A stretch of 63,299 nt of DNA, the filler included, from Reticulomyxa filosa (Eukaryota; Protista; Foraminifera): NCBI GenBank assembly GCA_000512085.1. It is 14 parts of 14 records of this genome, joined end to end, with 100 filler letters (N's around TTAATTAATTAA, not from the genome) between each part and the next. Parts side by side here need not be neighbours in the genome. Positions count along the whole stretch, not along the records: positions 54,027 to 59,439 come from ASPP01024557.1; 13 more parts are not named here. The stretch is one strand, 5' to 3'. Below the pieces are notes generated by a model. It did no database searches and had not been told where the DNA came from. It saw only the letters and a list, made by a program, of their open reading frames with translations. Of this stretch, positions 53,840 to 59,599 are shown piece after piece (positions within the stretch are counted from its first letter, which is position 1; each line of letters opens with the position of its first letter). A program made the position numbers and the translations under genes.

Positions 53840-54337
53840 AAAAAAAAAAAAAATATTTGTCCAAATTTACTTTATATACATATACATATACATATATGTA
53901 TATATGTATATATACATATATATATANNNNNNNNNNNNNNNNNNNNNNNNNNNNNNNNNNNNNNNNNNNNTTAATTAATTAANNNNNNNNNNNNNNNNNN
54001 NNNNNNNNNNNNNNNNNNNNNNNNNNCCCAAAAAAATTTTGTAAAGTTTTCATTGAAGATGAAATTGCGCCTTACAATCAATTATCGTCGATAATTCAAG
54101 CATTATAAACCGTGAGTTTGTTGATCTTTTCTTTTTACTTTGTTTTTATTGAGTATTGTGTTCCTTTGTAACGATGTGCTATTTTTTAGGTTAAAATCTT
54201 AATTCTCGCTAAAAAAAAATGTTGTTCAATAATCCGATATGCAATGAAAATAATTATTTAAGTTCAATTCAAACATAAATTGTTTCAATAATTTACTTTT
54301 TTAAAGCTGTAATAATTTTTTCAAGAAGTTACAAAAT

Positions 54338-57300
54338 TTACAAATCAAAAACAAAAGGAAAGCAATTTAAAATAGAATTCCTTTGTATTCGTGCGAGATC
54401 GTTTACATCAAAATCTTCACTCAAAATGAGTCTACTTAAATATTTTCCCCAATAACGAGAATACATAATCGGACTTGGATATGGCATGCAACCTTTCTGT
54501 AAAACATTCATTTTTTGGTTAATTGTAAAATAAAATAAAGTAAATCCTCTCCAATAAAAACAAAACTCGAAAAGGCGCGCCAAAAGCAAAACCATAACAT
54601 AAAGTATGAATGAATTGATAAAAGTATGAGACAGCATCTTTACTTTCTCGAATGTGAATATCATCTTTTAAGACAAGAACGCGTAAAAAATGATTAAAGT
54701 TGACATTAAAACGGAAATAAATTTCCCACATGTGCGTATATGTAACGCTGTCTTGCACCACAAATGGTTGTTTTGAGGCCTTGTAATATTGTATTTGTGT
54801 TTTGGAGTTAGTATTTCCTTCAAACCAATTGTCAATACTATCTTTCCACAATGTTTCTTGCTCATAGAAAAACAATTGTTTTGATTTTTCTATTGTGCAA
54901 AAGGTTATTTTTGGACGCCATCTGGTAATTCCTTCAGATTTTTTTTTGGATGATTTTTGGGATTTTTTCCAAACGCAGTCAATTGATCTTTCAATCGCAA
55001 ATAATTCTATAGTTATTGATTTGACTCTTTAAAGATGAACGATAAATACACAAATACAACCTTAATAAACGCTTACCATTGGTTATAATGGCATCACATA
55101 AGTCCTTTTGTGTTTAGTTCAAAAATTGAAAGAGGACAACATACATTTAAAAAATTTGTCGTATGTGATGATTTAAAAACAATAAAATAGATATACAACA
55201 AATGTTATGTGAAAAAGGACCTCTCCCAATCCACGGCGAAATACTAAAATGTTGGAAGCCGGTTTTGTTTTCTTTTCGGTGCATTCACGTAAATATTCAG
55301 TAAACGCAATTGGCAGCTTTTTTGCCAATTTGTGATTAGGAATAACGGCCTTTTTTTCCCCCATTTTTAAGGATGTAATCTTCCATCACTTGAGATTTTA
55401 TGTTCCATTTTTTTTAGTCAATAAACAAACAAAGTTAAAAAAAAACTAATATATGTCTCAGTCACTCGATTGGGCGGCATGATAATTGCAAAGAATCGCC
55501 AATGCTTGAGCGATCCCTCCAAAGGTTTTGTGGTGATACTGATCACTCCAATGGAAGGTCTGCGATCACTTGCGGAGGAAACGTCAATCCCCATGACAAG
55601 CATGTCATTAAAGAGTGGGCAAACGCAATTGATATTCAACTCCAACTTCCATAACAAACTACCAAACTTCAGCAACACTTTTTGCAAACAGTACCAAATT
55701 GCACTTTTGTTGCTACACTTTGCTGGCTCAATAAATTCTACTATTGCACCACTATTTCTGTACTTTCCAAAGGTCATTATACGTGACATTAATATCGCAA
55801 TCTTTTTTTTCAACACCAAACTTTGTTTCCAAAAAAAAAAGTGCAAGAAGAAAAAGAAGGGAAAGTGTATATGATTATGTAATTTTTATGCACGTAAAGT
55901 TTGTTTGTTTTTTTTAATGCTCAACTTTGGAAGTTTGGACACAATGACCATTTGGCAATACGACAATAATACAATTTTGTTTGATACGTTTTGCACTTTG
56001 GACAAGTAATTTGTCATCGAATAGATTGATTTCAAACAGAGTGACGGGGGCAGTTGTTAGTTTGAAAGGGCTCTGCTCTAACCAATAGTGGATCAGCTTC
56101 TTTGCTTGCTCTGCATATACCTTGTCTCCACTACAATACAATACAAGGAATGAAATACCCGTTGCGTTTTTATCGCCATGAAAGCACTGCATTGCTATGT
56201 CATCGTACCACTTTAAATCTTTTGGGCAATTCAATGCCTTTTGTCCACCGATGCCGTCTAGGATACATAATTTTGGAGGCGGTAATATAGAGCCACTTAC
56301 TTTCATCGGCCTGGCTTCTATATCCATTGCTCCCTTGTCGCATCTTTTCTTTTCATTTCAAATAATTATAATTACCAATTGAGCCATACAAAAACAAAAA
56401 CAAAATAAAATAAAAAATAAGGCAAGGAAATGTTCACAAAAAAAATTAAACAAATTTTGCATTTTTTTTGTTGCACATACGTATACCAAATAATATTTTT
56501 GAATAAGTTCAATCCCAATTTCAAATTGTTCTTGAAGACTTAAATGAATTGAATTGTTAACCAATTGTTTCCTTGCTCCAATTATCTTTGCAAATAATAA
56601 ATAGTGTGAATATAATATTTGTGTTTTTTCGATTGCCGTTGTGTGTGCATTGCATTCGTAACGCAACATAACTTGGCTGTCAGCAATCAAATGTAATTTT
56701 TCGAAGGGATATGGGAATACGTCACCATTACTTGTTTTAACAAGACAGGTTTCATTCTGCTTTGGTTTTGATCTGTATGTTATCGGGGCTATTCCATCTT
56801 TTTCCCAATGCAAAGATCGTAATTCAACGATGCATCGAGTGTCATCCACCAACGCTTTTTTCCCTTTTTTTAATTCGAAAGAATTTTATCACTTCCAAAA
56901 AGAATCACAAAAAAAAAAACACTTACGTATACTTTACCTTTTAGTTTCTCGTTAAAAGTTTGCAGTAATATGTCATCAGATAAACATTGTCTGCGAATCG
57001 AATCAATCATTTCACGCATCTTGGTAAACATACAACAAAAGGAAACAAAATAAAGTCGTACTATACGTATGTGTCCACATATTGTTTCTCTACCAAACTG
57101 AAAACCAACAAGTGATAACCGGTTGAATGGTGAATATCACAATGACCCGTCCTAATGATAACTTTAGCTGACAGACAGCGTTGCTATTTCATGTGTTTTT
57201 AATGTCTTATTGCAGGTATAACTATTTTTAGAGATAAAAAAACGTAACAAATCCAATTTTAAATCTGGTACTTCAATATCCGCATTCATTCCCACAATTT

Positions 57301-58354
57301 TTCTCGTTTTTCGTTTTATCAAGTCTCGTTTTCCCAAATTGTCGTTTGTCTGTAACATCGACCATCAAGTTTAGAGGTTATCGTACGTACACAAATATGT
57401 GGACTCTTTTTCCCTATTATTCAACAACAAGACAAAACAGACCCAGTTCAAGAATCGAAATAAATGCGTGCCTTGAGCAATCTCAAACAATGGGACACTT
57501 TTGGAGCGCGTAAGACGTAAAGAAAAAGGGTCAATTTGCAAAGAGTATGTTTCGTCATTTTCAGCTGAATTAAATACAATCAAATAGTTTCCACAAAAAA
57601 ATGTATCTACACCCGGACCAAATCTCGCTTCCATTTCTTTATCGAATGAAGTCTTCTCAACACTTTTTTCAATTTTTTTTTTTTGTATTTGTTCCAGTGC
57701 AATCATTTATTTTTGTACAAGTGACTCCATCTCATTTTTTTGTACCGTCACAAGTTAATATACATATAGGTAAAAACAACCAAAAAAATACCTGTTTTCT
57801 AAGAAAATGGAAGATAACATAAATGTTTGATTTTTCTCTTGCATTTCACTTTCAAGAGGTAAAATTTCTACTTGATAATACAATAAATCTGGTATCATTC
57901 CACCCGTATTTATCATACAGCCATTTGTTGCTAACACTACTGTTTTGCCGTCTTTTCAGTTGTTAAATTATTTTTTGTTTTTTTGTTGTTTTTTTTTGCA
58001 TTAGCAATTGAAGTTGTAACAACTTTTGCAAGATTTACAAAAAAAACAAAGAGGTATACAATATGCCATGCAGCTGCGCAATGGAGGCTTGGGTAGATAT
58101 TTTTGATATTCTGGAGTCAGTGGATACTTTTCAAATGTCTCTTCTTTGGTCCAGGTCTTCAATTCGTTTAGATCAGGCCGAAATGGTGTCCAAAATTCTT
58201 TGTCTTTTGACAATGATACTATCTTTTCAAAAACTTGAGCCTCTGTAGACTCCGTATTTCGATATCGTACTATTCGTCGATGCGCTGTGCCATGGCTACA
58301 CTTGGCATAGCTTGTATTCAATTGACTAAGTAAAAATGAATTGACAGGTTCCAC
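54338..58354 (-). CDS. Highly divergent Argonaute/PIWI-family protein (multi-exon)
   Basis: Motifs appear in order: GKTVVLATN..LLYYQVEILP (N), KVSGSILPPPKL (L2), QKVLLKFGSLLW, VMGIDVS, ILVFRRGLGE, PKITFCTIEK, VVQDSVT, VLVLKDD, FIHTLCYGF, PYPSPIMYSR. The true start may lie slightly upstream. Confidence 0.85.
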
Positions 58355-59599
58355 ATATCCTTTTTTCTTTTTTTACGTACAAGTCAATTATTCATTAAAA
58401 ACACCCTTTTGTTAACAACCACAGAAGCTTCAAAGAATGCATGTCAGATGAAGCCTAAACTTTCTCCTGGTTTTCCAAAAGCATGTCTTACAGTAAATTT
58501 TTTTAAAAAAGGAAATGAAAAGTTCAGATACAAGCAAAAAATGTTTGATGTAGTCATTTTAAAATTTGTGATGTTATTTGTCATGATTCATTGATAAACA
58601 CTTTTGTTAAGATACATGAAAAAGCATTTTATTTCGCGTGTACTTATCTATATTTAAAAATATGAAAAACATCTTAACCAAGCAAATCACTCACACAGAA
58701 TACAGTACTAAAATTACAATGAATAAATAAATAACATCGCGCATGCTTCATACAAGGTCTTTAAGTCCGCTAAAAAGACAACAAAACTAAAATTAAAACA
58801 AAAGGTTTAGTAACAAAGATAATTTATTTAAAAAATTGAACATAAAACAATAAACAAAATCATTTTAATATTTCTATCAAATATTATTGAATACCAATGT
58901 TAATTTTGTTCCAACTGGTTGATATCACAGAGCATTTAAATTTCTTAAGAAATTCAGTAGCACATAATAATATGAAAGGAAAGACATAGTGTAATTTTTC
59001 CAACTGGCTGTTCACAAAAAAGTTAAAATCTACTTAATGAAAATTGTTTTATAATAATCTACTTCAAAACAAATCATAAAACAAAACAGTTAAATCACTT
59101 TAGTTTATTTGAACAATTCAGTCGTTGCAAGTCCTAAAGAACAAATTAATTCATCCGAAGATTTAAAAAATCTTTCTTGTTCGGGTCTTTGCCGGTGTTG
59201 GAGCCAAGAAAAACGCACCTGTAAGCCATGTCTCCATGGACACTAGTTTGATAGTACGTTAATGATAACAAATATACTTTTTTCTTGTTTGGATCTTTGC
59301 CTCTGAAGCCTTCTGCCTCCTTGCATGTACCATGTTTAATCTTTTTTTTGCTGTTTTGTTTCTAGTAGATTTATTTGGCATGCCATTCCCTTTGCGGGCT
59401 TTTCCCCTTGTTGGTTTTAGTTTGTCAATCATGATATGTNNNNNNNNNNNNNNNNNNNNNNNNNNNNNNNNNNNNNNNNNNNNTTAATTAATTAANNNNN
59501 NNNNNNNNNNNNNNNNNNNNNNNNNNNNNNNNNNNNNNNAAAAAAAAAAAGTGTAATCCTAATGCGTATTTAGACAGTTAATGCTATATGCAAGTTTGA

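What the first reader, a model, noticed from the sequence alone, without database searches (positions are those of the whole stretch)
54338..58354. Extremely divergent, slicer-dead Argonaute/PIWI protein
Seen: the full N-PAZ-MID-PIWI motif order. The first catalytic Asp is kept (GIDVS, about 55585), but RDG becomes RRG (about 55235) and the last tetrad position YAH becomes YSR (about 54455). The conserved GTSRPxHY segment is replaced by FNHFLRV. Known: the DEDH/D tetrad is required for slicing. Inference: a non-slicing, lineage-specific Argonaute clade (compare nematode WAGOs or trypanosome PIWI-tryp) that might define an undescribed small-RNA pathway, possibly connected to the abundant gene-fragment DNA in this genome.
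Basis: partly seen in the sequence, partly recalled or inferred. Interest (0 to 1): 0.8.

Follow-up and report, generated by a model that had tools for sequence, protein, structure and literature searches.

The report
Slicer-dead PIWI-type Argonaute gene
This is an apparently intact, intron-rich gene for a very diverged PIWI-type Argonaute that has lost three of its four RNA-cutting residues; such non-cutting Argonautes are known elsewhere, but this small foraminifer-type branch seems undescribed.

Summary
A 12-exon minus-strand gene (54338-58354, all introns GT-AG, 70-153 nt) joins into about 925 codons with no internal stop. No single exon hits Pfam or PDB. However, the main PIWI exon finds Reticulomyxa filosa RFI_07118 (E 5.5e-20) and environmental proteins with significant Pfam PAZ and Piwi domains. 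A profile of that family matches the window's exons collinearly, and solved PIWI-clade structures (E 7e-44) better than AGO-clade ones (about 1e-27).

The tetrad reads D-A-R-R: only the first Asp is kept. The Glu finger, second Asp and His are gone, and no alignment restores them. The window gene, the R. filosa gene and one metagenome contig form a well-supported subclade that shares loss of the Glu finger and second Asp, plus four intron positions and a 28-nt microexon. The non-slicing state is therefore old, not a recent lesion.

Not confirmed: the N and PAZ domains, the start codon, and expression. The window copy also evolves about twice as fast as its R. filosa relative and has changed two guide 5'-end pocket positions. 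A decaying or neofunctionalised copy therefore remains possible. The link to a new small-RNA pathway or to gene-fragment DNA is untested.

The parts
54338..58354 (-). Whole gene span as seen: 12 exons and 11 GT-AG introns. The joined reading frame is 925 codons plus TAA.
   Evidence: Three-frame reading. Exon joining in a local script gave no internal stop. Exon GC is 0.362 against intron GC 0.271.
58405..58442 (-). Candidate short first exon: ATG at 58442 and a GTGTTT donor at 58404, followed by a 79-nt intron to the acceptor before 58325. Unverified, and one of many frame-compatible options.
   Evidence: Enumeration of ATG/donor/acceptor combinations. No RNA data were available.
58060..58354 (-). 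Exon 1 (open frame). There is no in-frame ATG until 58069-58067, so the 5' end is unresolved. It ends in phase 1 at a GTATAC donor.
   Evidence: The chance of 89 stop-free codons at this base composition is about 6e-4.
57792..57939 (-). Exon 2.
   Evidence: Frame-consistent GT-AG junctions. No Pfam hit.
57443..57662 (-). Exon 3. The 3' junction rests on the model only.
   Evidence: hhalign to the family profile gave nothing.
57173..57349 (-). Exon 4. The 3' end is ambiguous: alternative donors at 57271 and 57172 are both in phase.
   Evidence: No Pfam hit.
56938..57019 (-). Exon 5. Its 5' end is ambiguous: it could begin at the acceptor before 57097.
56487..56854 (-). Exon 6. It sits where a PAZ domain should be, and its last ~20 residues start linker 2. 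Only a weak, collinear, non-significant PAZ-like match was found.
   Evidence: hhalign E 0.31 to family columns 311-354. The local HMM alignment begins at model residue 401, inside this exon. AF2 pLDDT 44.7.
55926..56348 (-). Exon 7: end of linker 2 plus the first two thirds of the MID domain.
   Evidence: Pfam ArgoL2 E 0.29 at its first 20 residues. hhalign E 0.0043 to family columns 397-485. Covered by the 196-bit local HMM alignment.
55466..55801 (-). Exon 8: end of MID plus the start of PIWI, including GIDVS (first catalytic Asp at 55585-55583) and the family motif PLEGSLKHW.
   Evidence: Big search hits P0001 5.5e-20, P0005 7.7e-6, P0006 2.1e-5. hhalign E 2.6e-14, probability 98. tblastn.
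55736..55738 (-). Glu codon at the MID-pocket column that is Gln in nearly all other aligned members (Arg in P0011) and in B. mori Ago2 and Aubergine. From memory, this is Q545 in human AGO2.
   Evidence: Same column in MAFFT, HMMER and hhalign.
55221..55349 (-). Exon 9. Its first codon (GCC, Ala, 55349-55347) sits at the glutamate-finger column. FRRG has Arg (55235-55233) at the second catalytic Asp.
   Evidence: hhalign E 0.0017 to family columns 657-688, ending in FRDGvae. tblastn to P0001 E 1.8e-8. Alignment.
55077..55104 (-). Exon 10: a 28-nt microexon encoding DLCDAIITN. It has the same length and phase as the microexon of the R. filosa gene (ATFDAIITN).
   Evidence: It fills exactly the residues present in the intronless relatives P0005, P0006 and P0007.
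54567..55006 (-). Exon 11: PIWI core. FNHFLRV (54698-54678) replaces the RPxRY motif, and there is a lineage-specific insertion of roughly 25-30 residues.
   Evidence: hhalign E 1e-9, probability 96.5. Alignment A3. tblastn.
54338..54496 (-). Exon 12: PSPIMYSRYW, with Arg (54457-54455) at the catalytic His column, then a hydrophobic C-terminus and TAA (54340-54338).
   Evidence: hhalign E 2.7e-5. tblastn to P0005 E 3e-9.

Best explanation
The locus is a real, structurally intact, multi-exon gene for a highly diverged PIWI-clade Argonaute paralogue. The genome is foraminifer-type, probably Reticulomyxa filosa or a close relative. The linker 2, MID and PIWI parts are homologous to an environmental protist PIWI family. 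Of the DEDH tetrad only the first Asp survives, and the positions read Asp, Ala, Arg, Arg. The RNase-H-like site therefore cannot bind its two metal ions, and the protein cannot slice; this is inferred from established Argonaute biochemistry. The same loss of the Glu finger and second Asp is shared with the R. filosa gene RFI_07118 and a metagenome contig. It thus arose once in their common ancestor and has been carried since. The most likely mode of action is a non-cleaving binder or scaffold, acting either through a small-RNA guide or through protein partners, as with other slicer-dead Argonautes. Shown here: homology, gene structure, the residue states, and the subclade. Inferred: no slicing. 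Not shown: expression, RNA binding, and any pathway.
For: Homology. Exon 8 finds P0001, P0005, P0006 and P0007 in 1.8 billion proteins; all four hit Pfam Piwi, P0005 and P0006 well above its cut-off, P0007 just under it and P0001 only weakly. Profile A4 of seven relatives matches exons 7, 8, 9, 11 and 12 in collinear order at E 4e-3, 2.6e-14, 1.7e-3, 1e-9 and 2.7e-5. A local family HMM scored against the script-joined model gives 196 bits, E 4e-62, over residues 401-911.

Clade. Profile A4 scores PIWI-clade structures at 120-153 bits and AGO-clade structures at 100 bits or less. P0006 alone shows the same order.

Residues. The tetrad columns are identical in the MAFFT, HMMER and hhalign alignments.

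Intactness. 925 codons with no stop, at a base composition where a stop is expected every 12-13 codons. All 11 introns are GT-AG. The five PIWI-region junctions restore exactly the residue spacing of intronless relatives.

Shared history. Four intron positions and a 28-nt microexon are shared with R. filosa contig L002. The subclade has support 96/98 and 98/95.

Constraint. Pairwise dN is 0.65-0.71 and dS 1.6-3.0. In the microexon, the shared DAIITN codons differ only at synonymous sites.
Against: No transcript evidence: no sequencing run could be listed. No in-frame ATG in the first 86 codons of exon 1. No predicted protein 50% or more identical to this exon is in the protein library, which suggests the gene is unannotated. 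The window branch is 1.14 substitutions per site against 0.60 for its R. filosa sister. The window keeps only 29 of 65 strongly conserved family columns, against 40 for R. filosa. Two MID-pocket columns conserved in the family are changed only in the window (family Lys to Ala; Gln to Glu), and the RPxRY motif is lost. N and PAZ homology could not be shown. dS is saturated, so dN/dS is unreliable and does not isolate the window lineage.
Confidence: 0.6

Rival explanations
1. It is a decaying or silent paralogue: a young pseudogene, or a relic kept open by chance in a genome rich in gene fragments. It has no present function.
For: Its branch is twice as long as its sister's. It has lost more family-conserved residues, keeping 29/65 against 40/65. 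Lost residues include MID-pocket positions and the RPxRY motif. There is no obvious start codon, no detectable PAZ or N domain, no close predicted protein in the databases, and no RNA run listed.
Against: The 925 codons and 11 canonical introns show no stop or frameshift, although a stop is expected every ~12 codons at this composition. The homology-checked junctions are exact. Exons are clearly GC-richer than introns. dN is well below dS against the R. filosa gene. The catalytic loss itself is ancestral to three genes, so it is not a sign of recent decay.
Confidence: 0.27
2. It is a slicer after all, using non-canonical residues. One possibility is the kept Asp plus residues supplied from elsewhere. 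Another is that it cleaves as part of a complex.
For: The first Asp (GIDVS) is invariant in the subclade. The wider family also departs from DEDH, with Lys then a conserved His at the last position, YAKH.
Against: Three of four metal-ligand positions are Ala, Arg and Arg. The window also lacks the family's neighbouring His, having Tyr there. Two positive side chains at metal-binding positions argue against two-metal catalysis; this rests on established RNase-H/Argonaute chemistry and is an inference.
Confidence: 0.03
3. The Argonaute likeness is a chance set of short motifs in an unrelated protein.
For: No single exon hits Pfam Piwi/PAZ or any PDB Argonaute. The language-model atlas gave nothing.
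Against: Significant links lead through intermediates to Pfam Piwi and to solved PIWI structures. Five exons give collinear profile matches.
Confidence: 0.01

Closest known systems
Reticulomyxa filosa RFI_07118 (ETO30000.1, 'hypothetical protein, partial') together with the adjacent gene model on contig ASPP01005730.1
   Same: Nearest relative found: 37-39% identity in exon 8 and 35% over 347 aligned columns. It has the same four intron positions and the same 28-nt microexon. It keeps the first Asp and lacks the Glu finger (Gln) and the second Asp (Lys).
   Different: The R. filosa gene keeps more family-conserved residues: MID-pocket Lys and Gln, KPTRL in place of the RPxRY motif, and the His next to the last tetrad column. 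Its branch is half as long. Its N-terminal half is off the contig, so PAZ cannot be compared.
Environmental protist PIWI-like family (P0005, P0006, P0008-P0012; JGI, ENA and Logan assemblies, organisms unknown)
   Same: Homologous through linker 2, MID and PIWI. Shared family motifs include PxEGSL and YQFI..L...AF..PF.
   Different: The five members long enough to cover that region show a Pfam PAZ match, and all seven match Pfam Piwi at or above its cut-off. Most keep Asp, Glu/Asp and Asp at the first three tetrad positions. The window shares only 20-27% identity with them.
Animal PIWI-clade Argonautes with solved structures (Piwi-like 1/2, Siwi, Drosophila Piwi, Ephydatia Piwi-A)
   Same: Best structural-database relatives of the family profile, aligned over nearly full length at E 7e-44 to 8e-34.
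   Different: Those proteins carry the canonical catalytic residues, for example RDGV and KYAH in the printed alignments, and a recognisable PAZ. The window has neither. No window exon alone reaches them.
Catalytically inactive Argonautes: human AGO1 and AGO4 (Arg at the His position; AGO4 also Gly at the second Asp), nematode WAGOs, and Tetrahymena Twi12. Their residue states are from my own knowledge. Twi12 as an essential PIWI that binds 3' tRNA fragments is from PMC4050365.
   Same: They work alike in principle: Argonaute folds without a complete tetrad, acting by binding and recruitment rather than cutting. The His-to-Arg change has a direct precedent.
   Different: No phylogenetic relationship was tested or is expected, since WAGOs are nematode-specific. 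Those proteins keep functional PAZ and MID guide-binding pockets, which is not shown here.
Trypanosomatid PIWI-tryp / Leishmania PIWI-like protein (PMC3528672, abstract seen)
   Same: An atypical protist Argonaute-like protein with a PIWI domain but no recognisable PAZ.
   Different: No sequences were compared here. The window gene still has about 400 N-terminal residues where N, L1 and PAZ would lie, with a weak collinear PAZ-like trace.

Membership tests
Eukaryotic Argonaute/PIWI superfamily | PIWI (RNase-H-like) domain homologous to Pfam PF02171 | tested here: met
   Not met by direct Pfam scan of exons. Met through intermediates: exon 8 reaches P0005 and P0006, which hit Pfam Piwi at 1e-19 and 7e-20. 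hhalign of exons 8, 9, 11 and 12 to family profile A4 gives E 2.6e-14, 1.7e-3, 1e-9 and 2.7e-5.
Eukaryotic Argonaute/PIWI superfamily | MID domain directly upstream of PIWI | tested here: met
   The local family HMM aligns model residues 401-911 without a break across linker 2, MID and PIWI. Exon 7 alone gives E 0.0043. The family's MID columns align to the QDE-2 MID-PIWI and to PIWI structures. Pocket residues are partly changed in the window.
Eukaryotic Argonaute/PIWI superfamily | PAZ domain | tested here: inconclusive
   No Pfam PAZ hit. The family N-terminal HMM found no hit. hhalign of exon 6 gave E 0.31, at the collinear PAZ columns. BLASTP to the P0006 PAZ region gave E 1.3. The AF2 model was too poor to search.
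Eukaryotic Argonaute/PIWI superfamily | N domain and linker 1 | tested here: inconclusive
   No hit for exons 1-5 in Pfam or against the family profile. About 300 coding residues lie where these domains are expected.
Slicer-competent Argonautes | Complete DEDH/DEDD catalytic tetrad | tested here: not met
   The window reads Asp / Ala / Arg / Arg at the four columns. The alignment is agreed by three methods and anchored on B. mori Ago2 and Aubergine.
PIWI clade (as against the AGO clade) | Closer to PIWI-clade than to AGO-clade sequences | tested here: met
   Tested for the family profile, not the window alone: 120-153 bits for PIWI proteins against 100 or less for AGO proteins, and the same order for P0006. 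A rooted phylogeny with broad sampling was not possible, because only two canonical sequences were in hand.
PIWI clade (as against the AGO clade) | Arg-Gly/Arg-Ala N-terminal motifs for Tudor binding (typical, not universal) | tested here: not met
   None in exon 1 as modelled. RG repeats are present upstream of P0006 on L001 and at the C-terminus of P0008. The window's true N-terminus is unresolved.
Any functional Argonaute | Binds a small nucleic-acid guide | not testable with these tools
   Needs immunoprecipitation or in-vitro binding. Only residue inference is available: family Lys to Ala and Gln to Glu in the MID pocket, with the Lys at the K570-like column kept.
Nematode WAGO clade | Membership of the nematode-specific WAGO branch | not tested
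The family's best matches are PIWI-clade, so WAGO is only a functional analogy.

The most novel reading that the evidence does not exclude
Foraminifera carry an old, conserved subfamily of PIWI proteins whose metal-binding acidic residues were replaced by basic ones. In the window copy, the PAZ domain and the guide 5'-end pocket have also been remodelled. Such a protein might work without a canonical small-RNA guide, for example as a nucleic-acid clamp or scaffold in the large-scale nuclear and genome restructuring of foraminifera. A PIWI gene is reported as upregulated during Zerfall in Allogromia (bioRxiv 10.64898/2026.10.21.760831).
Probability: 0.15. Interest if true: 0.7.

Novelty: new member of a known kind. 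Interest (0 to 1): 0.4.

Why it matters
RNA silencing in Rhizaria is barely explored. A 2026 paper on Plasmodiophora calls itself the first systematic survey and found only AGO-clade, DDH-bearing proteins there (PMC13547706). The open literature I could search has no paper that discusses a Reticulomyxa Argonaute.

This locus, its R. filosa relative and one metagenome contig show a PIWI-type branch in foraminifer-like genomes that lost its cutting site long ago yet kept long open genes. That gives foraminifer biologists concrete targets for expression, localisation and RNA pull-down, and it corrects a split annotation in R. filosa. In the wider Argonaute field, slicer-dead paralogues are common, so the finding is useful rather than surprising.

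Tried and rejected
- **Per-exon Pfam scans**: only a sub-threshold ArgoL2 hit.
- **Per-exon phmmer against PDB**: no Argonaute. A 0.0008 hit to an EcoR124 specificity subunit was judged chance, being two weak pieces in non-collinear order.
- **Word-index protein search with exon 8**: nothing.
- **Word-index search with whole P0006**: only itself, because the words came from its poorly conserved first 500 residues. Repeating on residues 400-753 worked.
- **ESM atlas on exons 8 and 6**: no usable hit.
- **AlphaFold2, single sequence, of exon 6 and of exon 7 minus a few end residues**: pLDDT 44.7 and 42.2, too poor for fold search, so none was run.
- **Sequencing runs**: none was listed, so no reads could be laid and splicing could not be checked.
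- **Exact-product look-up of a window ORF**: not on record.
- **Metagenome scans**: no relatives.
- **dN/dS**: dS is saturated, so I use it only qualitatively.
- **Enumeration of possible first exons**: too many frame-compatible options to choose without RNA.
- **Rfam and repeat scans of the piece**: nothing of note.
- **Big-search hits P0002-P0004**: rejected as repeat artefacts.
- **Joined model**: the spliced protein was never sent to a search, family or folding tool. That joined step is left out, and the model was used only inside local scripts.
Full report
**What is in the piece.** The piece (54027-59439) is AT-rich, 32% G+C. On the minus strand a chain of open frames runs from 58354 to a TAA at 54340-54338. 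I placed the exon borders in two ways. In the C-terminal half I used tblastn matches to relatives. In the N-terminal half I used frame-compatible GT...AG pairs.

The model has 12 exons and 11 introns. All introns are GT-AG, 70-153 nt long, and often start GTAT/GTAC and end AAAAAG or ACAG. Joined inside a local script, the exons give 925 codons with no internal stop. At this base composition a stop is expected about every 12-13 codons. Exons have 36.2% G+C, introns 27.1%, and the flanks 24-28%.

The spliced protein has no reference. It was used only in local scripts. Every key conclusion is also backed exon by exon, by reference.

**Is it an Argonaute?** No single exon hits Pfam Piwi or PAZ or any solved Argonaute. 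The only direct trace is a sub-threshold ArgoL2 match (E 0.29) at the start of exon 7, which is where linker 2 should end.

The exhaustive search with exon 8 (window:55457-55822:-) gave the link:
- P0001, E 5.5e-20, 39% identity
- P0005, E 7.7e-6
- P0006, E 2.1e-5
- P0007, E 5.1e-5
- three repeat artefacts

P0005 and P0006 hit Pfam Piwi at about 1e-19, and P0006 also hits PAZ. P0001 is Reticulomyxa filosa ETO30000.1, 'hypothetical protein RFI_07118, partial'.

A second word search, restricted to the PIWI part of P0006, added P0008-P0012, which are environmental sequences. All five match Pfam Piwi at or above its cut-off, and four of them also show a PAZ match (P0011 has none). The search also returned B. 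mori Ago2 and an Aubergine.

A profile of the seven family members (A4) matches the window's exons in collinear order:

| Exon | Family columns | E-value |
|---|---|---|
| 6 | 311-354 | 0.31 (not significant) |
| 7 | 397-485 | 0.0043 |
| 8 | 546-643 | 2.6e-14 |
| 9 | 657-688 | 0.0017 |
| 11 | 716-818 | 1e-9 |
| 12 | 823-853 | 2.7e-5 |

The local family HMM scored against the script-joined model gives one unbroken alignment of residues 401-911, at 196 bits and E 4e-62. Linker 2, MID and PIWI are therefore established.

**PIWI or AGO?** The family profile scores solved PIWI-clade proteins at 120-153 bits (E 7e-44 to 8e-34), aligned over almost their whole length. These include Piwi-like 1 and 2, Siwi, Drosophila Piwi and Ephydatia Piwi-A. 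AGO-clade proteins score 100 bits or less. P0006 alone gives the same order. This is similarity ranking, not a phylogeny.

**The catalytic site.** The alignments are anchored on B. mori Ago2 and Aubergine and agree between MAFFT, HMMER and hhalign. The four tetrad columns in the window read as follows:
- Asp, in GIDVS (codon 55585-55583)
- Ala, the first codon of exon 9 (55349-55347)
- Arg, in FRRG (55235-55233)
- Arg, in YSR (54457-54455)

The Ala call does not depend on which of two possible acceptors exon 9 uses, because it is the residue directly before the conserved hydrophobic pair.

The wider family itself has Lys at the His column followed by a conserved His (YAKH). The window has Arg then Tyr there.

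**An old, shared loss.** A maximum-likelihood tree of the MID-PIWI region was rooted on the two canonical proteins. It places the window with the R. filosa gene (support 98/95) and then with P0007 from a metagenome contig (96/98). Their tetrad columns read:

| Gene | Asp 1 | Glu finger | Asp 2 | His |
|---|---|---|---|---|
| Window | D | A | R | R |
| R. filosa | D | Q | K | Q |
| P0007 | D | K | R | not covered |

One ancestral loss therefore explains the two middle positions.

The R. filosa contig (L002) shares gene structure with the window gene. The shared features are the acceptor before the exon 8 equivalent, the donor after PP(N/R)R, the donor after GL(G/A)E, and a 28-nt microexon of identical length and phase. 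That microexon encodes DLCDAIITN in the window and ATFDAIITN in R. filosa. Only the last intron is shifted, by a few codons. Within the shared DAIITN codons, the two genes differ only at synonymous sites.

**Functional gene or relic?**

Evidence for function:
- The long, intact, correctly spliced frame.
- Junctions that restore exactly the spacing of intronless relatives.
- The exon/intron composition contrast.
- dN (0.65-0.71) well below dS (1.6-3.0, saturated) against R. filosa.

Evidence against:
- No run was listed, so transcription is unknown.
- No predicted protein 50% or more identical to exon 8 is in the library.
- Exon 1 has no in-frame ATG for 86 codons. A short upstream exon (ATG 58442, 79-nt intron) is one of many options.
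- The window branch is 1.14 against 0.60 for R. filosa.
- The window keeps only 29 of 65 strongly conserved family columns, against 40 for R. filosa.

Two MID-pocket columns also changed only in the window. One is Tyr in canonical proteins, Lys in the family and in R. filosa, and Ala in the window. The other is Gln in nearly all other members and Glu in the window (55738-55736). The Lys at the K570-like column is kept. The mapping to human AGO2 Y529, Q545 and K570 is from memory.

I put an expressed, non-slicing protein at about 0.6 and a silent or decaying copy at about 0.27.

**What could not be shown.** The first ~400 residues (exons 1-6) have no significant match to the family's N-PAZ region. 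Single-sequence AlphaFold2 models of exon 6 and of most of exon 7 were unusable, at pLDDT 44.7 and 42.2. By eye, exon 6 carries a shortened PAZ-like pattern at the right place, but that is not evidence.

**Source organism.** This is not given. The nearest relative and the shared gene structure point to R. filosa or a close relative. The 5.4-kb piece and its G+C content also fit the published R. filosa assembly, which has an N50 of 3.6 kb and 35% G+C (PMC10245619). This is inference only.

**Literature.** Two papers in the searchable library mention both Reticulomyxa and Argonaute, and in neither do the two terms occur together. PMC13547706 reports AGO-clade, DDH-bearing Argonautes in Plasmodiophora and calls rhizarian RNAi largely unexplored. 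A 2026 preprint reports PIWI upregulated in Zerfall cells of the foraminifer Allogromia. Slicer-dead Argonautes are well known elsewhere, so I rate this a new member of a known kind.

Noticed in passing
L002:113-1643 (R. filosa contig ASPP01005730.1): The annotated RFI_07118 (partial, 198 aa) and the next gene model (229 aa) are two pieces of one PIWI-domain gene. Joining five exons, including a 28-nt microexon at 794-821, gives 362 residues with no stop. The tail of RFI_07118 as annotated runs into an intron.
   Followed up: yes
L001:2-631 and 628-2889 (Logan contig from SRR22390424, 62% G+C): The ORF upstream of P0006, in another frame, begins with (RG)n repeats. It looks like the missing N-terminus of the same ~950-residue PIWI protein, split by a frameshift in the assembly. 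P0008 carries a long RGG/GRG tail at its C-terminus.
   Followed up: partly
Family alignment (P0005, P0006, P0008-P0012), last tetrad column: Six of the seven environmental PIWI-like family members have Lys where canonical Argonautes have the catalytic His (P0009 has Ser there). A conserved His follows directly (YAKH). Whether these proteins slice is open. P0008 has lost the tetrad independently (Glu, Asp, Gly, Lys).
   Followed up: partly
window 59262-59432 (-): A 57-residue Lys/Arg-rich ORF lies at the very edge of the piece, in a patch of higher G+C (0.38 against 0.28 around it). It has no Pfam hit. It could be the 3' end of a neighbouring gene or a distant 5' exon, since a GTATAT donor at 59277 is phase-compatible with the acceptor before 58325.
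   Followed up: partly
window 58329-58356 (-): An ATG at 58356 is one base out of frame with exon 1 and sits just upstream of a T5 run. A single-base homopolymer miscount in the assembly would make it the start codon. This cannot be checked without reads.
   Followed up: no
window 54783-54880 (-), inside exon 11: The window has an insertion of roughly 25-30 residues, rich in Asn, Gln, Thr and Lys, between the KITF strand and the PFVVQD strand. All relatives lack it, including R. filosa.
   Followed up: no
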